DNA of 64,000 bases, taken from NCBI GenBank assembly GCA_004764695.1, contig SMSO01000031.1, positions 6,430,761 to 6,494,760 on the forward strand, read 5' to 3'. Within the stretch, counting starts at the first letter, position 1. Each line of letters opens with the position of its first letter. The notes under the pieces were generated by a model, which saw nothing but the letters and a program-made list of their open reading frames with translations, made no database searches and had not been told where the DNA came from. This DNA comes from Schizochytrium sp. TIO01. Lineage: Eukaryota > Protista > Bigyra: Labyrinthulomycetes. This document shows positions 16,854 through 27,938 of this stretch, piece by piece. Position numbers and translations under genes: made by a program.

Positions 16854-18477
16854 GCGGGCGTAATTTGTATGCACAAAATCTGCAAACTGTTGCTGCACGG
16901 ACACTGACTGACACTAACTGATCTCTTGACGGTGTGTATTGGTCTTTGTTTGTCGACTTGTCTTTTCTTTTTTCCTTTTGTTTTAAATGCACAAAGCATA
17001 GGCGGGCATTTGGCATTGGCTTTATCTGTGTGTTCTTTTTGCTCAAAGTACAGGGTATTGCACCTTCAGTCCAGCCCATCTTCATTTATTCGAGATAGAT
17101 GCTGAGCGAAACCTACATTGAACTTTGATGGATTTCCGCTTGTTGGCTTAATTGTTGTGCCTCATCACGCCTTTTACGTGGGTTCACTCGATATTTATCC
17201 TGAATGACCGAGGTGTCTTACAATGGCGGTGATGCTTAAGCACTGAAATGCATACCCTGGTCATTTCGACCCAACCAACCTGAAGATCCCACGGGCAAGC
17301 TTTATGCCTAAGAATTCACGACACTCATAATCCGCACTCGAGCACTGAAGAAGCTGGAGCGCCGCACCCTTTACTTGAGCATAGGTTTTGCGAAATAGCA
17401 AACCCCAAACCGCTCCATCATTCGCTATCGTAGTACCTCTATAGTACCTCTATTGGAGGTACATATGCCACACATACTTTCTTCGACGTCACCCAAAACC
17501 ACTCCTACAGTTTCCCTTATAAACTCCTATCAGCGCGCAATGGTCTCTAAATTCGCCTTTGGGCGGGAATCTCTGCGTGGTCCTGCATCTCATACAAGTA
17601 TTCGCTGGCGCCTTGGCTGGCCTATGTTTTAGAGTAGACGAGGGCCTAAAGGGCTGTGGAGCCCGTAGTTCTGGAGCCCGTTCTAAGCGACAGCGTCGGC
17701 GACTCGCAGGTTTGTTGTGATAGTTCTTCGATGATTCTCGAGAAGACAGAAGGTATCGAAGCGCGTGGCGAAGCAAAAGCCTCGAGGAGCTTCGCAAGAA
17801 CGTAAGCACCATGCAACGCATCTTGGTAAGTGGCTTAGGGCGCTGCGGTGCCCCGGCCAAGCGGCTTTCCATTGGCTCCACCCGTCGAAGTGAAGGACTT
17901 GGAGACAGAAGGAAACAAGAACAAGAACAAGAACGAACAGAACGAACAGAGAAAGAACAGAGAAAAGAACAGAGGAATAAGTTCCTCGCGATGGGAAAAA
18001 TCCGACTTCTTCACGCCCCAGTGCGGCCCAAGAGGAGAGCCGTAAACTTTAAGCAGAATCTTCCCCTCACACCCCCTCCTAGCGCGACTGACCCAACCCC
18101 CCCAACTTGGCTCGTTCCCTCACACCGCAGCCCCCTCCTGCGACCCCCCAGCTCGGCAACCTGCCCCCTCTCAACGCACAAGAGTACCCCCACACCTGCA
18201 GTGCCGTCCCCTCGCGCACTGCAACCTAGGCACGCCCAGTGGGGCTGAAGGGGAAGCAGCTCCGCCTGGCACAGAAGCTGCTCTGTTTGGGCCCCAGAGG
18301 CGGCCAGAGGCAGAGGGGGAGGAGCGGCCAAAGCTAACCCAACCCTAGTTAAACCTAACCCGAGCCACGAGAGCGCGTCGTTCCTGAGCGGCGCCTTTCT
18401 CCAATTTTCGCTCGCGCGGAGGCCGCTGGCGCGCGACCGGCTGCGCAAGAGTGGCACGGAGCCGCCACAGCGGCAGC

Positions 18478-21400
18478 ATGGACCCCCTCGCGGCGGCACC
18501 CGCCGCTGACACCCCCGCGGCCGCCCCTGCAGCGGCGGCGGAATCGGCGATGACCGCGAATCCAGGCCCGAACTGCCAGCAGGCCGCCCCCGCCAGCCCC
18601 GAGGCCGCTGCCGAGGGCGGCGCCGCGGGGGCCGGGGCGGCGCCCGGGGAGGCTGGCCAGGCTCCCGGCAAGCCTCCGGCCGCCCGCGCAGACAGCGGCG
18701 CAGGCAGCGGAGCGGCGCAGGACGGAGGAGCGGCGAGCGAGGGCCTCGCCGCGGGTCCTATAGATTCTGGTAGGGAGGATGCTAAGAGTGCTGCGATAAT
18801 GACAGAGGGTGCCACGAAGCAGGACGGGTTCCGCGACGGTTCTGCGGGAACCGGCGATGTGGAGGCTAAGGCGGAAGCAGAGGGTAAGGGAGAAGCAAGT
18901 GGAGACATGAATAATGCAGCAGCAGCAGCAGAGGGTGCTGAGCGGCAGGAGGGAGCAGGCGTGGTGGATGGTGATGAAGACGACGACGATGATGAGTTTG
19001 AGGAGTTCATGCCGGCGACGGTACCAGCGCACGCTCGCGTGGAGCTGCTGGTGAGGCTGTTTCCGGGTATTTCGTTCGTGCAGAGACTACAGCAGAGCCC
19101 GACGAAACGGAGACTGGTGGAGGCAATGCCACCGCATGAGTTTGAGAAGCTTGTGATGGTTGTGCAGTCTCGCACGCAAGGGTACAGGAAGAGGTGTGTG
19201 GAAATCCGCAGCCTCGCGCAGGTGGCGTCGCTCATCAAGTCGTCCAGACGCATCCTCGTGCTTACGGGGGCTGGAATCTCAACGAGTTGCGGAATTCCAG
19301 ACTTTAGATCCAGCCACGGAGTATACTCCATGCTCGACGGTTACAAGCTCAAGGACCCGCAGGACCTATTCTCCATCCACTATTTCCGCAGAAACACGAA
19401 GCCTTTCTACGACTTTGCGCGGAAACTCTGGCCTGGAACTCATGAACCAGCTCCCACCCATTACTTCATCAAGCGTTTGGAGACTCATGGGCACCTTCAC
19501 CGCAATTATACTCAGAATATCGATACCCTTGAGTGTGTTGCAGGTATTGAGCGTGTCTTGCAATGCCACGGCTCGTTTGCGACGGCTACATGTACACGCT
19601 GCAAATATCGATGCGAAGGAGACCGTATCAAGGATGATATCATGAACAAGCGGGCACCCGTCTGTCCACGCTGCGCTCAGAGCCCTCCCTCGTCCTTAAT
19701 GGAAGAAGTGGTCATGCGCGACCCAAGCATGCGTGCCTTTCGTTTCGGAGGTGGTCGCTCCAACTCTATCTCCAGCGAGAGCGATCTCGAGTCGGACTTA
19801 GGCCTTCGTGGATCTCCCAGTCACGCCGCACAAGCACGCGCCCAGGCTTCAGCCAGTGCTTCTAATCATCATAGCTTGTCTACTGCCCCGAACTCTGGGT
19901 CAACTCCTGAAGCAGAAGGCCAGCATGTTCCTCAGCCCGAGCCCTTTTCTGCCCCGGCCTCGATAGAAGAACGCAATAGCACGGTCTCATTGTCGGGCCC
20001 GATAGCTGGAACTCAGAACTCAACCTCTGCTGTTGATTCAGCTCATGTGTCAGAGGCACAGCCGAAAATACGGCCCACTGTGGCAGTGAGTACCTCTGCT
20101 GCCGCTGCACATCGCGCCATCGGAGGTAGCCATGGTCATGGAAGCTCCTTTGAGCCGGATTCCCCATTTGCCTCTTCTGCAAAGAAGGTGTTTGGCAATA
20201 ACGCTGGTCACCATCAGCCTTCTGGTCTGCAGCACAGCTCAGGCTCTTTGAACAAGCAACAAAATCAACAAGGTAAGGATCAATCGAAGCGCCCTGGAAT
20301 TAGGACAAACAGTCTGGCTTCTGATGGTGACCCGATGGTACCGCCAAGTCCAACCTTGTCCCAACTAAGTCGGTCTAACAGCCTCAGCTCTCTAGCAACG
20401 CCCCGCGCAAACGTTCTGTCTCGTAGCTACCATCGCTCTGCGGCAGAAGCAGCAGATAGTTCTTCCAAGCTGCAAACGCAGAGCGATGACTTTGATACTA
20501 TCAAGTCAGAGAAGGATGCTTCTTCCTTGGCTGCAGTGAAGGCCGAGGCAAGTTTGCTCCCCATGGACATGGCCCAGGATATGGCTAGTAAGGAGGCCTT
20601 GTCTACTGCCGACGAAAATGGTCACGTCGATGACGATAACACTAACAATAATAACCTCTTGCCCTCTGACGTTCAAGCTTTGTATGCTGCACATGGTAAT
20701 CAGGATGATGACCCAAAGGGAACGGGCCTTGACCCAATGCCTGTGCAAGCGACACCAGAGGAACATATGCCCCCTACAGAGATTACAACTGCAAGGCCAC
20801 ATGGAGGCGCTTCCGCAGATGTTTCTATGGGATCCTTTTCCTCTTCTGTTTCTTCTGCCGCTGCCATGCCTCCAGTGGCGCCACCCGCTAACGATAACGG
20901 ACCTACTGCCATGGAGATCTCCAAGCCTTCTCAATCCCAAGAGCACGAGCACGTAGATCGTGCTGAGGAAAGCCACCGGGAGAACAGCACGGATTCCCAT
21001 GCTGAATTTGATGTGGCCAAGGACGGCGACTTGTTAGAGGATGAACTTCCTTTCGTGGATGAAATGTTTGACAAGGGTATCATGAAGCCTGACATTGTCT
21101 TCTTTGGCGAATCCCTACCGAACGAATTCTTCGACTGTATCGAGGAAGACGTTCGACTTTGTGACATGGTTATCGTGCTCGGCACAAGTCTTAAGGTTGC
21201 ACCTGTGTCACGAATTATCGAAATGGTTGATCCTGAAATCCCGCAGATTCTCATCAATCGCGAGGTTGTTGCCCAGCCTCACCAGTTTGATGCAGAACTT
21301 CTTGGCAATTGTGATGCTGTGGTCGCAGCTCTTGCTCGGGAGCTCAACTGGGATCTGCCTGGTGTTGCGTCCCCGAGCAATGAATCAACAGGTGAAAATG

Positions 21401-21789
21401 ATGGCGAACCTGATGATGATGCAGTTGCTAATGAAGAAGGTGAAGATGTTACCGGAGAACCTACAGCTTACCGGCAACACGAAAATCGTCCGCATCGGTT
21501 CTTGTTCCAAGGTGCTTATGAAGACTCTGATGATGAAGAGGATTCCGACGAGGATGATTCTGATCTAGAGAATGGCGAAAATGATGCCTCAGATGAGTCA
21601 TCGTCTTCGGACGAGGAGAACAACGAGGCCCAAGAACTGGGACCCGATATGGTTGCCCGAGACCGTGCGGAAGGTTCAATGTCATCCATTGATCAAGAAC
21701 TTGGTGACAAACGCCCTCCCAAGGCTGGCTTGGAGGGCAGCCCAAAACGAGCTCGAATGAATGGTTCCTTCAGCAATACTATTGAGTGA
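18478..21789 (+). CDS. SIR2: Class I NAD-dependent deacetylase (Sir2/SIRT1-like) with large insertion in the Zn-binding domain
   Basis: GAGISTSCGIPDFRS, YTQNIDTLE, QCHGSF, CTRC...CPRC, then after ~467 aa GIMKPDIVFFGESLP, GTSLKVAPV, PQILINRE, LGNCD. First ATG at 18478. Confidence 0.92.
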   Translation: MDPLAAAPAADTPAAAPAAAAESAMTANPGPNCQQAAPASPEAAAEGGAAGAGAAPGEAGQAPGKPPAARADSGAGSGAAQDGGAASEGLAAGPIDSGREDAKSAAIMTEGATKQDGFRDGSAGTGDVEAKAEAEGKGEASGDMNNAAAAAEGAERQEGAGVVDGDEDDDDDEFEEFMPATVPAHARVELLVRLFPGISFVQRLQQSPTKRRLVEAMPPHEFEKLVMVVQSRTQGYRKRCVEIRSLAQVASLIKSSRRILVLTGAGISTSCGIPDFRSSHGVYSMLDGYKLKDPQDLFSIHYFRRNTKPFYDFARKLWPGTHEPAPTHYFIKRLETHGHLHRNYTQNIDTLECVAGIERVLQCHGSFATATCTRCKYRCEGDRIKDDIMNKRAPVCPRCAQSPPSSLMEEVVMRDPSMRAFRFGGGRSNSISSESDLESDLGLRGSPSHAAQARAQASASASNHHSLSTAPNSGSTPEAEGQHVPQPEPFSAPASIEERNSTVSLSGPIAGTQNSTSAVDSAHVSEAQPKIRPTVAVSTSAAAAHRAIGGSHGHGSSFEPDSPFASSAKKVFGNNAGHHQPSGLQHSSGSLNKQQNQQGKDQSKRPGIRTNSLASDGDPMVPPSPTLSQLSRSNSLSSLATPRANVLSRSYHRSAAEAADSSSKLQTQSDDFDTIKSEKDASSLAAVKAEASLLPMDMAQDMASKEALSTADENGHVDDDNTNNNNLLPSDVQALYAAHGNQDDDPKGTGLDPMPVQATPEEHMPPTEITTARPHGGASADVSMGSFSSSVSSAAAMPPVAPPANDNGPTAMEISKPSQSQEHEHVDRAEESHRENSTDSHAEFDVAKDGDLLEDELPFVDEMFDKGIMKPDIVFFGESLPNEFFDCIEEDVRLCDMVIVLGTSLKVAPVSRIIEMVDPEIPQILINREVVAQPHQFDAELLGNCDAVVAALARELNWDLPGVASPSNESTGENDGEPDDDAVANEEGEDVTGEPTAYRQHENRPHRFLFQGAYEDSDDEEDSDEDDSDLENGENDASDESSSSDEENNEAQELGPDMVARDRAEGSMSSIDQELGDKRPPKAGLEGSPKRARMNGSFSNTIE

Positions 21790-22633
21790 TAGATAGATGA
21801 ATTGACATGACATCGACCCCAGCATATGTGTTTACGTCGTTTCTTTTTAGAGGCAAGTAATGGAGATTTGGGAGCAAAATGATGTGCATGCTATAACATA
21901 GGTGATAGTTCTCGCTCTTGTTTTCTGCCCTCTCATTGAATGCATGTTTCCCGTTCAACTCTTGTCTCTAAACCTAACTTCTTTGTTTCTGTGTCCTACA
22001 ATGCTGCTCGTTTCGGTGCATTTATTCATGTGCTGAAGAGAGCGAGCGTGCATAAGTTTTGCCTTGACGGTTTTGGGAAGCTCGAGGGGCGTGAGGAGGA
22101 ACTGGCATACACCGTTACTGCAATGTCACTGCAAGGTGCAGTGTAAGTCTTGAGCAGTACAAAGATTACAGCAAAACCATCAACCTTTCTTAGCCAAATC
22201 ATCTGCACAATGGCACAAGAATTAAAAAACAAAACTAAAAATAATAAAATTAAAAAAAAAAATGTTCACCTGCAATTGAATATACAATACTGATGTATTT
22301 TCCGTGGCTTGACATGGCTTTCTCGATAGGGCTCGTAAAGAACATTTCTCAACTCTTGATTAAAAGGTTCTCGCGCTGCTGTTCCATATACCTACCTAGC
22401 AAAGTCAGATTATATTTTGTGTTGAAGGTCCGAGAGAAGCAAGGGTTATTTCTCACCATCACCATCAAGATCTGCATTGCAACATTCAAGCTTATTATAA
22501 GCCAAATGTAATAATTCTATAAACTTCATACTTTCATCAAACCTGATCTCGAACAGTCATATTTTAACCATGCACAACTCTACAGCAAACAAAAGCAGAT
22601 CAAAACTAACAGGATATAGTGATATTGACTTAT

Positions 22634-24550
22634 TTACTCTACAAAGATACCGATTGGATCGAGATCCTCGAGCAGTGACGCAGTATGGACGTCCATAAAC
22701 GTGGCCGTTCCATCAGTGCCCGCAAGGCTGGTAATTGCATGTTTGCCTCCAGGGTGGTTTTCAGCATAAGCTGTGAGGTCGTATACCTTTCCGTCGATGG
22801 CAACCCAGCAATCCTCAGGCTTGTTGTGCTTCTTGAGGTCAGCAAGAGATATGCTCATTTGCTGGACTTCAGTGCCATCATGAGCATCAGAAGAGCCGAT
22901 CCGTCCTTGGCCGGACGCCACGCGTTTTGTTTGTGTACGGACCGGAACATGGGACCCTACGTGAAGACCAAAGACAGCACATTCCGTAAGACCGTTACCG
23001 CCAAGACGGTTGTTGCCGTGAATTCCGCCCACAACCTCGCCAACAGCGTATAGCTTACCACCAGCAACAGGAACGCCCGCATCGCTCAAACAGCGACCTT
23101 GAGCATCAATCCGCAAACCGCCCATCGAATAGTGGACAGCTGGGGTAATGTAACCAACATAAAAGGGAAAGTCCTTCGCAATAGGAGCGTCGGGACACAC
23201 TGTTCTGTTGTAAGGGTCAGGGAATGACTGCATGTCACTGCAAGATTGATCAAATGCCTCCAACGTCTTTTGAACAACCCCAACATCAGCTCCAAGCTCC
23301 TTTGCTAAACTTTCCACAGAATCAATCTCCCACATCAAACCCTTTCTTTTGTACATGGGGATATGCTTTGGAGCCTGAGCAGCAACTTGCGCACTCAACA
23401 CCATGAGATATTCCGGTTGGGAATCCTTGTCCTCATTGTGTGCAATCATCTTTTCCGAAACATACTTGCGAGTACCTAGTTCATTTACAAAACGGTGGCC
23501 ACGGTGGTCCAGCATCACAGCACCAACACTGCGCAAAAGTTCCGCAGCCAAAGTCTTTGAAGGACTTAGGCGATCTTTTGGGTCTACAAAAGCTGTGGGA
23601 TGGACCTGAACCTGTTCAATATCGACAATATCCGATCCGATAGCCGTTGCAAGCTTAATGCCGTCACCCGTTGCGAATTTTCCGTTTGTTGTTCCGAACT
23701 TTGCAAGGTCCGGTCGGTGCTGCAACAAGAAGGAGTTTTCTCCTCGATGGTACCCGTACCCGCCTGTTGCAATTACAACAGTATGAGCTTCAATGTCAAA
23801 GGTGTGTTGGGATGAAGTGTCGGTGCAGCGAAGCCCGCTAATAGCATGGTTTTCAACTAAAATCTCCTCGACCTTAGTTTTGCGATAGAATTTCAGCTTC
23901 CCAGAGTCCTCGTATTCTTTAACAGCACGGTTGACAGCAACAATAAGTTCGGAACCAGCAAGGCCGGTGGAAGGACGCCATGTACGCGGCCTAGAGTGGC
24001 CACCCAGCTGGCTAACTTCGCCGAGTGACATGCCTACACGAGACCGAAGCCACTCAAGAGCCTCCACACTGCCTTGAGTAAGCACATCAACAAGCGGATT
24101 TGTAGCATATGAGGGGCGTTCACTGCCCTTTACCATATCTTCTTTGAATTGCGCCACTGAATCGTTGAACCTCGACATGCTAGTGCCGTCAATACCATTG
24201 ATTCCACTTGAGGCCTTTGCCGAGTTGCCACCAGGACCTCCTTCTTTGTCAATAAGAATTACAGAACCACCACGATCAAGGATTGAAAGTGCTGTTGTAA
24301 GGCCAGAAAGGCCGGCACCAATGATGACTGCATCTGGGGTCTGAGATCCTTCCCTCAATCCCGCAACAGCTCCAAGACGACGGAGGGCATGCCGAAGAAA
24401 AGAAGCATGGTGTCCCTCCATAGCAAAATTCTTGGCTAAAAGAATCAGTTCCTCATCACCATCCAACAAAGCATCCACGAGAATATCCTCAGAGTCTTCG
24501 TCAAGTGTGCCACTGCCTGCCGCAGAAGATACAATCCCGAGAGCGGTATC
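22634..24550 (-). CDS. Soluble FAD fumarate reductase (Osm1/flavocytochrome c type) + C-terminal cytochrome b5; no ATG start before the linker, probably fused to upstream Ero1
   Basis: IIGAGLSG, GGNSAKASSGING, LGGHS, ATGGY, TTNG...GDG, QVHPT, AELLR, RFVNELGTR, HYSMGG, HGNNRLGG (substrate and catalytic His/Glu/Arg positions present); b5 domain DCWVAIDGKVYD...HPGG...DVH. The frame is open upstream and overlaps the Ero1 tail. Confidence 0.9.
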   Translation of the reverse strand, partial: DTALGIVSSAAGSGTLDEDSEDILVDALLDGDEELILLAKNFAMEGHHASFLRHALRRLGAVAGLREGSQTPDAVIIGAGLSGLTTALSILDRGGSVILIDKEGGPGGNSAKASSGINGIDGTSMSRFNDSVAQFKEDMVKGSERPSYATNPLVDVLTQGSVEALEWLRSRVGMSLGEVSQLGGHSRPRTWRPSTGLAGSELIVAVNRAVKEYEDSGKLKFYRKTKVEEILVENHAISGLRCTDTSSQHTFDIEAHTVVIATGGYGYHRGENSFLLQHRPDLAKFGTTNGKFATGDGIKLATAIGSDIVDIEQVQVHPTAFVDPKDRLSPSKTLAAELLRSVGAVMLDHRGHRFVNELGTRKYVSEKMIAHNEDKDSQPEYLMVLSAQVAAQAPKHIPMYKRKGLMWEIDSVESLAKELGADVGVVQKTLEAFDQSCSDMQSFPDPYNRTVCPDAPIAKDFPFYVGYITPAVHYSMGGLRIDAQGRCLSDAGVPVAGGKLYAVGEVVGGIHGNNRLGGNGLTECAVFGLHVGSHVPVRTQTKRVASGQGRIGSSDAHDGTEVQQMSISLADLKKHNKPEDCWVAIDGKVYDLTAYAENHPGGKHAITSLAGTDGTATFMDVHTASLLEDLDPIGIFVE

Positions 24551-26012
24551 CTTTGATACCCTGTAGTCCCTCCTTGGTAGCCAATGGCATGCCGTTCATC
24601 TTTGAGACAGCTGGAGCAGCAGATGCGAACGAATTAGCTTGCCCGGAGAACATTGCATTTTTCATGTTCTCATGAATATCTATCGCCTCTGAAAACTTTG
24701 CAATGGTGTTGAAGAGTGCGACAACTTCCTCACGGGACAAGTTTTCCTTAATCAAGTTTTCAGGCAACAAAAGCATCTTTAAAGCGGTACCCATACCAAG
24801 AAGCTGCAACTTGCCGTGTAATTTGCAACGCTGGCAGCGGATGCAGTTGAAAATACTGCTAATGTTGTGAAAGATATCCTTAAATCGGCGTTTTAGGTTC
24901 GCCAAAGTAGATACCTTCGGGCCATTCTCATCAACAAACAAGAGGCTCTCATCGAATGCTTCAAACACAGTCTGGCATGATTGAAGCACAAATGAATCTA
25001 AAAACAAAGACACCAGCTTATTAGTGCGTTGGTCCTCGCGGGTATCTCCAGTGGCAAACTTAAACTCGCGAAGTACAGGTGTCGCCCTGCGTACTGCTCG
25101 CAGCAAAACGACAAAAGCAAACTCAAGGTTCTTGAATCTCTCGGGATTACTCTCAAATTGGCGTCGGAAGCGTTCTAAATCGCGTTCCCAACGATCCCGT
25201 TTGCCGGGCACAGGCGGTTTGTAGTGTTCTGAAATATGCAAGTTAATACTTGAATGCAAACCAGAGAGCATCCGGTAAAGGAACCTCTCCTCGTAGCACA
25301 TATCTGCTTCCTCAATTTCAAAGCAGTTTTCTCCATAGATTTCATTCCACACTGCACTACCATTATAACCCGTGTACATCTCAGGGTTTAACTGAAGGTT
25401 AATGTACTCCATTGTTGAATCGTTGAAGGGAAGTTTTGCACAAAGATTTGTCCAGAATGAAGGAAGTGACTCATCCTCGCAGTCCTCTTCTGCTTGGGAC
25501 ACAACATCGCCTTCATGCTGTGAAAGAGTCTTGTCGATTCCGACACCAGCACCATTACTTGGACCGCCAAATCCGCCAAATCCACTAGCACCAGGAGAAC
25601 CTCCAAAAAATGGACTACCTCCTGTGCTATCATCGCTCCCCTTCAACGAACACAAAGGCTCTGGAGCACTACCATCTGGTTCTGGGTCTTCATCTGAGCC
25701 GCAACTTGGCGCTTCTGGTTCCTCACCTTCGGCGTCAAGCGGGCACTCACCATCAAGTTGTACCCTAAAAAGTCTAAAGTAGGTTGTGTTTGTAAGCTCC
25801 TCTAACAGCCGGAGCAAGTAGTCTGAGTTCGCGGTCTTGATTGCCTCTGAATTGCAAACAAGCTCATCATCAAAAAGAACTTTGGCCCGGAGTGGTGGCT
25901 TTCCATCGCGACGACTATCCGCATTGGCAGCACCAGGAAGATCCGATAAGGCCACCACGAGGCAACAGAAAGCTGCGAGCAGCCATTTCCAAGATACTGT
26001 CTTTGATGACAT
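24501..26012 (-). CDS. ERO1: ER oxidoreductin Ero1 (N-terminal part of a probable Ero1-fumarate reductase-cytochrome b5 fusion)
   Basis: Signal peptide (WLLAAFCCLVVALS); YFRLFRVQL...CP; LQLNPEMYTGY; VWNEIYGENCF; LYRMLSGLHSSI; active site NISSIFNCIRCQRCKLHGKLQ (CxxCxxC); GTALK. Confidence 0.92.
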   Translation of the reverse strand: MSSKTVSWKWLLAAFCCLVVALSDLPGAANADSRRDGKPPLRAKVLFDDELVCNSEAIKTANSDYLLRLLEELTNTTYFRLFRVQLDGECPLDAEGEEPEAPSCGSDEDPEPDGSAPEPLCSLKGSDDSTGGSPFFGGSPGASGFGGFGGPSNGAGVGIDKTLSQHEGDVVSQAEEDCEDESLPSFWTNLCAKLPFNDSTMEYINLQLNPEMYTGYNGSAVWNEIYGENCFEIEEADMCYEERFLYRMLSGLHSSINLHISEHYKPPVPGKRDRWERDLERFRRQFESNPERFKNLEFAFVVLLRAVRRATPVLREFKFATGDTREDQRTNKLVSLFLDSFVLQSCQTVFEAFDESLLFVDENGPKVSTLANLKRRFKDIFHNISSIFNCIRCQRCKLHGKLQLLGMGTALKMLLLPENLIKENLSREEVVALFNTIAKFSEAIDIHENMKNAMFSGQANSFASAAPAVSKMNGMPLATKEGLQGIKGYRSRDCIFCGRQWHT

Positions 26013-26529
26013 TTGGACTTTAGAAAAAGCTTCACGTCACAACGCGTTTCGCAAGTTGATGGCAGATAACCCAAGCTAGCGAGTCGCCTTGCTCACAGAG
26101 ACCAAGCAGTTCAAATTGGTGGTAACGTTTCAAGTTCTTCTTTCTTGCAGAGTCTTTGACTAGGAGAGTCAACAACAATCAGGCAGTCCAGGAACGGCAA
26201 CTTGTTGCACGACTCCAACCCTGAAGTTGAGCCGCACAAGCTTTTCCAGTCCGGGCTTCCCCAGTTGCCTCCTCGAGGCGTTTTGTTTCCTGTCAGAACT
26301 GGTCGTCGATTCGGGTCTGGTGGCTCCCTTCGCGGGATCGCCCCCTTCGGTTTGCTCGAAACGTATTGTATTTTATTCGATTTTAGTACAACCGAGCTTC
26401 CACGCTGGCATTTTTGTACACTGGGACGAACGAAACATAGTTAAAAGGGGGTCCACTACACTGTGGCAAGTTCTGACACTGTCCTTCTACCAATGCTTGG
26501 AGAGGACAGATTTGACGATACATTGCTGG

Positions 26530-26584
26530 CGAAGTCACGTCGAAGGCACGTCAAAGTCACGTCGAAGTCACGTCGAAGGCACAC
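26530..26584. promoter_or_regulatory. Five tandem 11-bp units (C[G/A]AAG[T/G]CACGT) carrying ACGT/bZIP-type cores upstream of ERO1
   Basis: cgaagtcacgt-cgaaggcacgt-caaagtcacgt-cgaagtcacgt-cgaaggcacac read directly. The regulatory role is inferred. Confidence 0.5.
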
Positions 26585-27938
26585 TGGAATTGCAAATGGT
26601 GCGTTTCGTTAGTATACATACATCAGCAGGATAATCAACTTATGCGCCTTGTATTGAATAAAAGGAATAATTTTCTTTGCAAGTTTACTGTTAGGCATAG
26701 TAGTAGATGATATTTAGGGGATGCAATGTTTAAAAGATGTGTAGGGACTAAATTTGGGATAACAGACAATCTGAATTGGGCATTACGCAACTCAGCACGC
26801 AATGGTGGAATGCGGCAGCCCATTCAGTGTTTTTGCGAATGCCTCGTATGAATCTCTCGGGGGAAACCTGGACGCCACGTGGAGGCTTGCAACGCAAGTA
26901 ATGGCTAGAAAGTATTGCTCTACTTGGCCAAGATGAATCACAAGATAGCAAATTATCTGAATTGCGACAGCATACAAAACGCAAAGACAATAGAAAAACA
27001 GCTCCCTTGCCCTTGTGATTAATGGTTTATATGAAACCATATGAAGAAAAGCTGGACACCACCTGGAAGCCTGCATACAAAACTTCAACTTCGTATTTTT
27101 AAAAAATATAGAATCGAATGGATGGTGTCCAAATTTCGTTCTAAAGATGTGGCAATGCATCGAAGTGCAAGCACGGCACTGAAAAAATCTTTTAGCAATC
27201 TAGAACAGAGTGAAAAAAAAAAAATAGACACCAATCGACTCTGGTTTACATCTCACATTGCTGAAGCTTCGTCATTATTCGAAAGTTTCTTCATGTAGTT
27301 TCTTGTTATTTTCAATTTTGGAATTCGCAAATAGAACTATATAGCTAAAATAATATAAGCAAGTTGAATAGAATTATTTTTCATTGAGTGTTGTAGAAGA
27401 GTACCTCTGAAAGAAAATTGAAATAGTAAAATATTGCATGGATGAAAAAGTTGGAAAACACTAACTGTATTTTAAAAAGGATTTTCTAAAGAATGTGTTA
27501 TGATTAAACTTGTATAGAGGTGCACCGAGGCCATTCAAGGCCAGATACATATTTACTCAAAGGCTTGCAGCGCGTCAATGGGTATTTCTTCTTTTGTTGA
27601 TAATGTGAAGACATTCCTTCCGTGCTTTGAAGTGCAATTCTCTACATTGTTCCCCTTCATTCCCATAATTTGATCCGGTACAATAAGTTAGTATTTTGTT
27701 TTTGCTTTTCCTGACTACCTAATAATACTAAACTATGTTACTCAGGCTATACTTATACTAGATAATAGAAGAATAATGCGCTGCTTAGTAAGTCAACATA
27801 TTGACTTTAATTGTGTATAACCTTGAACGAGAACATAGAACAACAATCATTTCTTGTCATAGTATTAATTCTTGAAGCTATCGTTAAATCAGCAGCTCCA
27901 CTAGAGACGCTACGCATTCATGGGTGCATGGGAGGCTC

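What the first reader, a model, noticed from the sequence alone, without database searches (positions are those of the whole stretch)
22634..26012. Ero1 - fumarate reductase - cytochrome b5 fusion: a candidate single-chain, oxygen-independent disulfide-forming enzyme of the ER
Seen: Ero1 (signal peptide, CxxCxxC) is followed on the same strand by an Osm1/flavocytochrome-c-type fumarate reductase with intact catalytic motifs and a HPGG cytochrome b5. The reductase frame is open through the Ero1 tail. Deleting one base in ATCAAAGGAT (24550-24554) gives a continuous ...LQGIKDTALGIVSSAAGSGTLDEDSEDILVDALLDGDEELILLAKNF... and one ~1,125-aa protein. A 43-nt GT..AG segment (24559-24517, minus strand) would also restore the frame, so conditional splicing could give Ero1-only versus fused forms. 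Known: Ero1 normally passes electrons from PDI via FAD to O2, making H2O2; in yeast the separate enzyme Osm1 reoxidises flavin using fumarate to support anaerobic disulfide formation. Inference: this is a Rosetta-stone fusion wiring PDI to Ero1-FAD, possibly through the b5 haem, to reductase-FAD and fumarate in the ER lumen. That would allow oxidative folding under hypoxia without H2O2. I know of no characterised protein with this architecture but cannot run a search.
Basis: partly seen in the sequence, partly recalled or inferred. Interest (0 to 1): 0.9.

Follow-up and report, generated by a model that had tools for sequence, protein, structure and literature searches.

The report
Ero1–fumarate reductase–cytochrome b5 fusion gene
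This is one gene for a 1,125-residue secretory-pathway protein that joins the disulfide-forming enzyme Ero1 to a yeast-Osm1-like fumarate reductase and a cytochrome b5; the apparent break between the halves is one extra G in this assembly, and the same uncharacterised fusion occurs in many marine protist lineages.

Summary
On the minus strand, an Ero1 ORF (24501-26012) is followed by a fumarate reductase + cytochrome b5 ORF (22634-24478), and the two are out of frame by one base.

The break is an extra G at 24550/24551.
- Two independent transcript-like contigs (3,678 nt each) lack that base and show no splice.
- None of 20 public runs holds the window's version.
- The 43-nt intron idea is not supported.

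This is the only Ero1 locus in the 64-Mb genome, probably Aurantiochytrium.

The architecture is not unique. At least 104 of the fetched proteins are Ero1–linker–FRD–b5. They come from labyrinthulomycetes, diatoms, dinoflagellates, Amoebophrya, Chromera, prasinophytes and diplonemids. Their Ero1 domains lie on one side of a strongly supported branch, apart from canonical Ero1.

All six Osm1/Fcc3 catalytic residues, the Ero1 CxxCxxC and both b5 haem histidines are conserved.

A second fusion family, FRD–b5–Erv/ALR, also exists in other protists.

Seven literature searches found no description of either fusion.

Electron flow from thiols to fumarate is inferred, not shown.

The parts
22634..26012 (-). 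Whole coding region of the Ero1–linker–FRD–cytochrome b5 gene. It encodes 1,125 aa once the spurious G is disregarded; the stop codon is at 22634-22636.
   Evidence: The two window pieces match P0001/P0267 with 1-2 substitutions.
22607..26315 (-). Extent of the transcript-like contigs. One 3,678-nt contig in each of two runs spans both halves without a joint.
   Evidence: table 8. Depth is 33-57 against 344-354 for the neighbouring contig. There is no cover at 26316-26600, where a DNA run does have cover.
24550..24551 (-). GG where other data have a single G. The extra base causes the apparent frameshift and the Ero1 'stop' at 24501-24503.
   Evidence: table 4 (1 base left out at 24550 in X4 and X17). 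All 20 holder runs share at most 0.96 of the words.
25920..26012 (-). N-terminal signal-peptide-like segment (aa 1-31).
   Evidence: It is the only hydrophobic 19-mer apart from the Rossmann beta1-alphaA. Most homologues have the same feature.
24678..25811 (-). Ero1 domain (aa 68-445).
   Evidence: PF04137, 281 bits. (human Ero1-alpha 3AHQ/3AHR, yeast Ero1p 1RP4).
25650..25703 (-). Outer (presumed shuttle) cysteine pair C104...C121 in a disordered acidic loop. The spacing is 16 residues here rather than Cx4C.
   Evidence: C104 is present in 46 of 48 sequences and C121 in 48 of 48. The loop is 12-42 residues across the 48 homologues.
24825..24845 (-). Ero1 active-site CxxCxxC (C390, C393, C396).
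   Evidence: Invariant in 48 of 48 sequences. It aligns with the human Ero1-alpha C391/C394/C397 region.
24377..24575 (-). Conserved helical linker module (aa 480-545). It spans the frameshift site.
   Evidence: AF2 predicts four helices at pLDDT about 83-92. An HMM of this region hits the fused proteins but not the free FRD-b5 proteins.
22988..24334 (-). Soluble fumarate reductase flavoprotein domain (aa 560-1008). Catalytic residues are H804, E824, R827, R848, H960 and R1002.
   Evidence: PF00890. (Osm1 5GLG, E 1e-76; all six residues aligned). (TM 0.90, rmsd 2.4 Å to Osm1). (coordinates).
22679..22846 (-). Cytochrome b5 domain, with HPGG (H1086, at 22745-22756) and the second haem histidine H1109 (22685-22687).
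   Evidence: PF00173, 5e-21. (both histidines at least 90% conserved)..

Best explanation
One intronless gene on the minus strand encodes a secretory-pathway protein with this order of parts: signal peptide, Ero1, a conserved four-helix linker, an Osm1/Fcc3-type soluble fumarate reductase, and cytochrome b5. The frameshift in the window is a single extra G. It is most likely a consensus error of the long-read assembly; less likely it is a strain variant.

Proposed mechanism (inferred). Reduced PDI passes two electrons to the outer cysteine pair (C104/C121), then to the C393-C396 disulfide beside the Ero1 flavin. Instead of, or in addition to, reducing O2 to H2O2, the Ero1 flavin is re-oxidised within the same chain by the FRD-b5 cassette, probably through the b5 haem. 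The FRD flavin then reduces fumarate to succinate, using R848 as proton donor. The protein would therefore be a thiol:fumarate oxidoreductase, a covalent version of the yeast Ero1/Osm1 relay.

Because it is the only Ero1 of an aerobic organism, it must also support routine oxidative folding.

Sub-confidences: single fused gene about 0.93; electrons flow from thiol to fumarate within the chain about 0.55; the route passes through the b5 haem about 0.4.
For: The gene is continuous.
- Contigs from two runs cover both halves with one base left out at 24550 and no joints.
- MMETSP transcripts P0262 and P0266 and Logan proteins P0001 and P0267 have the uninterrupted 1,125-aa ORF.
- No run holds the window's version.
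- The assembly is 64 Mb in 37 contigs.
- The first ATG of the reductase frame lies only about 80 nt after the Ero1 stop and has no signal peptide.

The fusion is conserved.
- Dozens of proteins of 1,000-1,200 aa carry PF04137 + PF00890 + PF00173.
- Most of the best Ero1 matches in 1.8 billion representative proteins are long.
- 104 of the 315 fetched proteins are ERO-LINK-FRD-B5.
- Fused Ero1 domains sit on one side of a branch with 100% local support: 132 rows, of which 112 are fused, against 58 canonical rows.
- Named taxa span stramenopiles, alveolates, green algae and diplonemids.

The catalytic parts are intact.
- All six Osm1/Fcc3 catalytic residues are present, and Osm1 is the best solved relative.
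- CxxCxxC and the outer cysteines are invariant or nearly so, and both b5 histidines are conserved.
- There is no internal transmembrane segment, so all modules share one compartment.

The functional link has precedent.
- ero1-1 and delta-osm1 are synthetically lethal, as cited in PMC5638582.
- A second sulfhydryl oxidase class (Erv/ALR) is fused to the same FRD-b5 cassette in other protists.
Against: - No biochemical data exist for any member, and no paper on the fusion was found.
- The complex test of the Ero1 module against FRD-b5 gave no verdict.
- The aromatic second-flavin pocket through which yeast Osm1 takes electrons is not conserved (W295→S, F297→T, P162 deleted, F362→M). The yeast mechanism therefore cannot simply be transferred.
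- The outer cysteine pair lacks the canonical Cx4C spacing.
- There is no KDEL/HDEL-type C-terminus.
- A source of fumarate in the ER lumen is unknown, even in yeast.
- The hosts are aerobes or oxygenic phototrophs, so 'anaerobic folding' cannot be the whole rationale.
- The runs laid were contigs labelled RNA only by a guess. Raw reads of the assembled strain were not seen.
Confidence: 0.6

Rival explanations
1. The fusion is real, but the FRD-b5 cassette is not wired to the Ero1 flavin. It would be a co-delivered luminal fumarate reductase that re-oxidises free flavins, or takes electrons through b5 from another donor. The fusion would then serve only co-localisation or stoichiometry, and Ero1 would still use O2.
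For: - Yeast Osm1 can work through free FAD without touching Ero1.
- Free FRD-b5 proteins exist in the same lineages and in this genome, for example at contig C3:1452256-1454136.
- The docking test did not reach its mark.
- pTM is only 0.57.
Against: - The architecture, with a dedicated conserved linker module, is maintained across four supergroups.
- An independent Erv/ALR–FRD-b5 fusion exists.
- The free-flavin pocket of Osm1 is not conserved here.
Confidence: 0.27
2. The window is correct as assembled. This strain would carry a real frameshift, making a 503-aa Ero1 alone. The reductase-b5 would then be untranslated, or made from an internal start without a signal peptide.
For: - The window sequence itself.
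- Raw reads of the assembled strain were not available, and X1, the likely source sample, laid no contigs.
Against: - All 20 holder runs from 8 studies, including the best DNA holders, hold at most 0.96 of the words. That is the value expected if each lacks the extra G.
- Two contigs and several database proteins lack it.
- The downstream 638 codons stay open and differ from those proteins at only one or two residues (V1024I, plus N1063D against P0262), so there is no decay.
- It is the only Ero1 locus.
Confidence: 0.07
3. A 43-nt intron (24559-24517) is conditionally spliced, giving Ero1-only and fused isoforms.
For: A GT..AG pair of the right length modulo 3 exists.
Against: - It is one of 22 such pairs nearby, as chance would give.
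- There are no joints in the contigs.
- The transcripts keep these 42 bases, and they encode ...GIKDTALGIVSSAAGSG....
- Once the extra G is removed, no splice is needed.
Confidence: 0.02

Closest known systems
Yeast Ero1p with Osm1/Frd1 (anaerobic disulfide relay; Kim et al. 2018, PMC6242907; Neal et al. 2017, PMC5638582)
   Same: The same two enzyme families are proposed to act in the same compartment. Osm1 (5GLG/5ZYN) is the best solved relative of the reductase part (E 1e-76, TM 0.90). All six catalytic residues are conserved.
   Different: Here the two are one polypeptide with a conserved helical linker and a C-terminal cytochrome b5, whereas yeast Osm1 lacks any haem domain. The Osm1 second-flavin pocket residues are mostly replaced. 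The host is aerobic and has no separate Ero1.
Canonical Ero1 (human Ero1-alpha 3AHQ, yeast Ero1p 1RP4)
   Same: The Pfam ERO1 match is full length. CxxCxxC is present. The motifs around W222 and H253 align with human Ero1-alpha.
   Different: It belongs to a separate, well-supported clade. The outer cysteines are separated by 12-42 residues rather than Cx4C. It has a C-terminal extension of about 640 residues.
Shewanella flavocytochrome c3 (Fcc3, 1QJD) and flavocytochrome b2
   Same: A haem domain is fused to a flavin dehydrogenase/reductase and passes single electrons to or from the flavin. The FRD catalytic machinery is the same as in Fcc3.
   Different: The haem here is a single b5 domain at the C-terminus, not an N-terminal tetrahaem c domain. 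The proposed electron source is a thiol oxidase in the same chain.
FRD–b5–Erv/ALR fusion proteins of other protists (e.g. Triparma laevis TL16_g04186, P0328)
   Same: They have a signal peptide and the same FRD-b5 cassette, joined to a flavin-dependent sulfhydryl oxidase.
   Different: The oxidase family is different (Erv/ALR, QSOX-related) and it is placed C-terminal to b5. This fusion is not present in this genome.

Membership tests
ERO1 (PF04137) | Full-length match to the family profile above the curated cut-off | tested here: met
   281 bits against a cut-off of 27, covering profile positions 4-352 of 354.
ERO1 (PF04137) | Active-site CxxC next to the flavin, within CxxCxxC | tested here: met
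   C390, C393 and C396 are invariant in 48 of 48 sequences and align with the human Ero1-alpha active site.
ERO1 (PF04137) | Outer shuttle disulfide with Cx4C spacing on a flexible loop (spacing recalled from yeast C100/C105 and human C94/C99) | tested here: not met
   Two conserved cysteines (C104, C121) lie on a disordered loop, but they are 12-42 residues apart across homologues. A shuttle role is still plausible but unproven.
ERO1 (PF04137) | Entry into the secretory pathway | tested here: inconclusive
   There is a hydrophobic N-terminal segment here and in most homologues, and no other transmembrane-like segment. No dedicated signal-peptide predictor was available. There is no KDEL/HDEL.
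Soluble fumarate reductase, Osm1/Fcc3 class (PF00890) | Catalytic His-Glu-Arg-Arg-His-Arg set (Osm1 H281, E301, R304, R326, H435, R477) | tested here: met
   The equivalents are H804, E824, R827, R848, H960 and R1002 in the alignment to 5GLG. H804, E824, R827, R848 and H960 are invariant and R1002 is at least 90% conserved in the fusion family.
Soluble fumarate reductase, Osm1/Fcc3 class (PF00890) | Fold of the flavin and clamp domains | tested here: met
   Foldseek gives TM 0.89-0.90 and rmsd 2.4-2.5 Å to Osm1.
Yeast Osm1 specifically | Second flavin-binding pocket (S78, P162, W295, F297, L298, F362, Y363) | tested here: not met
   W295→S, F297→T, P162 falls in a gap and F362→M. S78, L298 and Y363 are kept (read from the alignment, using the residue list).
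Cytochrome b5 (PF00173) | Profile match and two axial histidines (the HPGG His and a second His) | tested here: met
   74.9 bits against a cut-off of 23.7. H1086 and H1109 are at least 90% conserved.
Thiol:fumarate oxidoreductase activity (proposed) | Fumarate-dependent, O2-independent oxidation of PDI or other dithiols by the single chain | not testable with these tools
   This needs enzymology.

The most novel reading that the evidence does not exclude
Ero1–linker–FRD–b5 may be an old, monophyletic form of Ero1, and in many marine protists (here for certain) the only one. It would couple oxidative protein folding directly to fumarate reduction through an internal haem wire, making disulfide formation independent of O2 and free of H2O2. 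Together with the parallel FRD–b5–Erv/ALR fusions, this would show that fumarate is a general terminal acceptor for eukaryotic disulfide formation. It would also give natural Rosetta-stone proof of the contested yeast Ero1/Erv1–Osm1 relay.
Probability: 0.45. Interest if true: 0.8.

Novelty: new variant of a known kind. Interest (0 to 1): 0.66.

Why it matters
What re-oxidises Ero1 when O2 is scarce, and how cells limit the H2O2 made by oxidative folding, are open questions. The only proposed enzymatic answer is yeast Osm1. It rests on weak binding (Kd about 200 µM) and on free FAD as a mediator.

A conserved natural fusion of the two enzymes, found across several eukaryotic supergroups and mirrored by an Erv/ALR–FRD fusion, is strong comparative evidence that the link is physiological. 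It also provides a single polypeptide on which the electron path can be measured directly.

It further implies that ecologically dominant plankton (diatoms, prasinophytes, dinoflagellates) may tie ER folding capacity to the supply of a TCA-cycle intermediate.

On the practical side, the gene model in this assembly needs a one-base correction. Several public annotations, for example those of Symbiodinium, split the gene into separate 'ero1' and 'osm1' pieces.

Tried and rejected
The genomic context of homologues, including P0118, could therefore not be inspected.
- Read laying offered only Logan contigs, not raw reads. X1, the likely source sample, laid nothing, so the extra G could not be checked in the assembly's own reads.
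- Complex prediction of Ero1 (45-455) against FRD-b5 (545-1125) scored 0.00 with no verdict. This is no evidence either way, and the tool did not use my alignment.
- The AF2 model coordinates were not exposed to scripts, so no flavin–haem distances were measured.
- The 43-nt intron is rejected.
- Seven literature searches found no paper on a natural Ero1–FRD or Erv–FRD fusion. Subscription journals are not covered.
- The MMETSP header TAXON_ID 87120 resolves to a fungus. I take it for a slip for 87102, Aurantiochytrium limacinum. Assigning MMETSP0961 to that species is from memory.
Full-length analyses used the natural database protein P0001, and the window was compared with it in two pieces.
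- A reverse role, with succinate as electron donor, was considered. It was dropped on thermodynamic grounds from general knowledge: the fumarate/succinate couple lies near +30 mV.
Full report
**What is in the sequence**

Two long minus-strand ORFs lie head to tail. ORF 24501-26012 (503 aa) matches Pfam ERO1 over its whole profile (E 1.6e-83). ORF 22634-24478 (614 aa) matches FAD_binding_2 (E 8.6e-75) and Cyt-b5 (E 5e-21).

The reductase frame stays open upstream to 24595, well inside the Ero1 tail. The Ero1 frame runs in codons to 24552 and the reductase frame resumes at 24550. One G of the GG at 24550/24551 is therefore all that separates the frames. The first ATG in the reductase frame lies about 80 nt past the Ero1 stop and has no targeting sequence. 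That already argues against two genes.

**The break is one extra base, not an intron**

A search with the open reductase frame returned P0001 at 100% identity.

Its cluster holds MMETSP transcriptome ORFs of 1,125 and 1,119 aa (P0262, P0266) with the same junction. Translated in two pieces, the window differs from P0267 at one residue and from P0001 at two.

Twenty public runs from eight studies hold the stretch. None holds more than 0.96 of the sampled words, which is what one indel would cost.

Four runs were laid on 22000-26600.
- Runs X4 and X17 each gave a single 3,678-nt contig, covering 22607-26285 and 22637-26315.
- Both contigs have one base left out at 24550 and no joints.
- Their depth (33-57) is tenfold lower than that of the neighbouring contig (344-354).
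- Neither covers the upstream intergenic stretch, where a DNA run does have cover. They therefore behave as transcripts.

The proposed 43-nt GT..AG is one of 22 frame-restoring pairs nearby and is retained in the transcripts.

The genome is 64 Mb in 37 contigs, the look of a long-read assembly. A consensus indel is therefore the likeliest cause. Raw reads of the isolate were not available, so a real strain variant keeps about 7%.

**Organism and gene copies**

The closest named relatives are labyrinthulomycetes: Mucochytrium at 51% and Aplanochytrium at 44%. The identical MMETSP cluster points to Aurantiochytrium limacinum. That rests on my memory of MMETSP0961, and the header's taxid looks like a digit slip.

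A six-frame Pfam search of the whole genome finds exactly one ERO1 locus, this one. Two further FRD paralogues and five Erv/ALR loci lie on other contigs.

**The architecture is widespread and forms one clade**

- In one search, dozens of proteins of 1,000-1,140 aa carry all three Pfam families.
- In an exhaustive HMMER search with the Ero1 part alone, most of the best matches are 1,000-1,650 aa long with Ero1 at the N-terminus.
- HMMs built from my alignment classify 104 of the 315 fetched proteins as ERO–LINK–FRD–B5. Many of the rest are truncated versions.
- Named members:
  - diatoms: Fistulifera solaris, Leptocylindrus and a Bacillariaceae MAG;
  - alveolates: Symbiodinium, Amoebophrya and Chromera velia;
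  - green algae: Prasinococcus and an Ostreococcus-containing cluster;
  - diplonemids: Namystynia and Diplonema;
  - one Batrachochytrium record, which may be contamination.
- A FastTree of 190 Ero1 domains puts 132 rows on one side of a branch with 100% local support. Of these, 112 are fused and most of the rest are evident fragments. The other side holds 58 canonical Ero1-only proteins.

Caveats: this is FastTree only, the tree is unrooted, and the sample is enriched for fusions by the way it was gathered.

**Are the parts functional?**

- *Reductase.* The best solved relative is yeast Osm1 (5GLG/5ZYN, E 1e-76; Foldseek TM 0.90, rmsd 2.4 Å). All six residues shown by mutagenesis to be needed in Osm1/Fcc3 are present, as H804, E824, R827, R848, H960 and R1002. 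Five are invariant and R1002 is at least 90% conserved in the family.
- *Ero1.* C390, C393 and C396 are invariant. C90, C104, C121, C178, C191, C230, C239 and C346 are conserved. The outer pair C104/C121 sits on a disordered loop and is 12-42 residues apart across homologues, not Cx4C.
- *b5.* The HPGG histidine and the second histidine are conserved.
- *Topology.* Apart from the N-terminal signal-like segment, the only hydrophobic stretch is the Rossmann motif. All modules therefore share one compartment.
- *Linker.* Residues 480-545 are predicted as four confident helices and are conserved only in the fused proteins.

**Mechanism**

[quoted passage not shown] In addition, ero1-1 is synthetically lethal with delta-osm1.

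Inferred here: the fusion makes that relay intramolecular. The aromatic second-flavin pocket of Osm1 is largely replaced (W295→S, F297→T, P162 deleted, F362→M), and a b5 domain always follows the reductase. I therefore favour Ero1-FAD → b5 haem → FRD-FAD → fumarate. This is analogous to Erv1 → cytochrome c and to the haem → FAD step of Fcc3, both recalled from general knowledge.

The host is aerobic and has no other Ero1. The enzyme must therefore serve everyday folding, and limiting H2O2, or bridging hypoxic or dark periods, is a more likely benefit than strict anaerobiosis.

None of this is measured. The docking test gave no verdict, and cofactor distances could not be taken from the model.

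**Independent support from a second fusion**

Following one odd hit (P0118) revealed about 18 clusters with this order of parts: signal peptide, FRD, b5, Erv/ALR. They include Triparma laevis and an MMETSP transcript. Their nearest non-FRD relatives are thioredoxin–Erv (QSOX-like) oxidases. Two unrelated families of disulfide-generating flavoenzymes joined to the same FRD-b5 cassette is hard to explain unless the cassette is their electron sink.

**Novelty and verdict**

The sequences are public, with automatic names such as 'fumarate reductase (NADH)', 'cytochrome b5 heme-binding domain-containing protein', or split 'ero1a'/'osm1' models. Seven full-text searches and the two key yeast papers gave no description of a natural fusion. 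Subscription-only literature was not covered.

I class it as a new variant of a known kind, the Ero1/Osm1 relay. It is a real gene that needs a one-base correction in this assembly. Its biochemical meaning is interesting but untested.

Noticed in passing
Not in the window: proteins P0118, P0316-P0332 (e.g. P0328 Triparma laevis, P0329 MMETSP): A second fusion family with this order of parts: signal peptide, fumarate reductase, cytochrome b5 (HPGG), Erv1/ALR sulfhydryl oxidase (CKLC and CGEC). Members are 870-990 aa in about 18 clusters. Their nearest non-FRD relatives are thioredoxin–Erv (QSOX-like) proteins.
   Followed up: partly
G000:C3:1452256-1454136 (L005/L006) and G000:C34:1965287-1966744 (L004): Two further soluble FRD paralogues in the same genome: an unfused FRD-b5 (649-aa open frame) and an FRD domain inside a 1,217-aa open frame. 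Both are about 38% identical to the fused one. Their targeting and partners are unknown.
   Followed up: no
window 22000-22631 (+ strand side): The neighbouring transcript-like contig ends at about 22631 with tenfold higher depth (344-354). It overlaps the 3' end of the fusion transcript by about 25 nt. The two look like convergent genes with abutting or overlapping 3' ends. X4 also shows a 3-base deletion at 22492.
   Followed up: no
window 18451-21789 (+): An 1,112-aa ORF with a sirtuin-like core, split by a long low-complexity insert and flanked by acidic tails. Local GC is 0.62 against about 0.46 elsewhere in the window.
   Followed up: no
MMETSP proteins P0264/P0265 (same gene as window 22634-26012): A second MMETSP transcript of this gene is split into a 142-aa and a 999-aa ORF by an indel in the Gly-rich loop (around aa 135-140). 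This is either an assembly artefact or allelic length variation in the disordered Ero1 loop.
   Followed up: no
Public annotations of homologues: Symbiodinium records model this gene in pieces named 'ero1a', 'ero-1' and 'osm1, partial', although 1,136-aa full-length versions exist in the same cluster. A Batrachochytrium salamandrivorans record (KAH9253608.1) also carries the fusion and groups with protist sequences, so it may be contamination.
   Followed up: no
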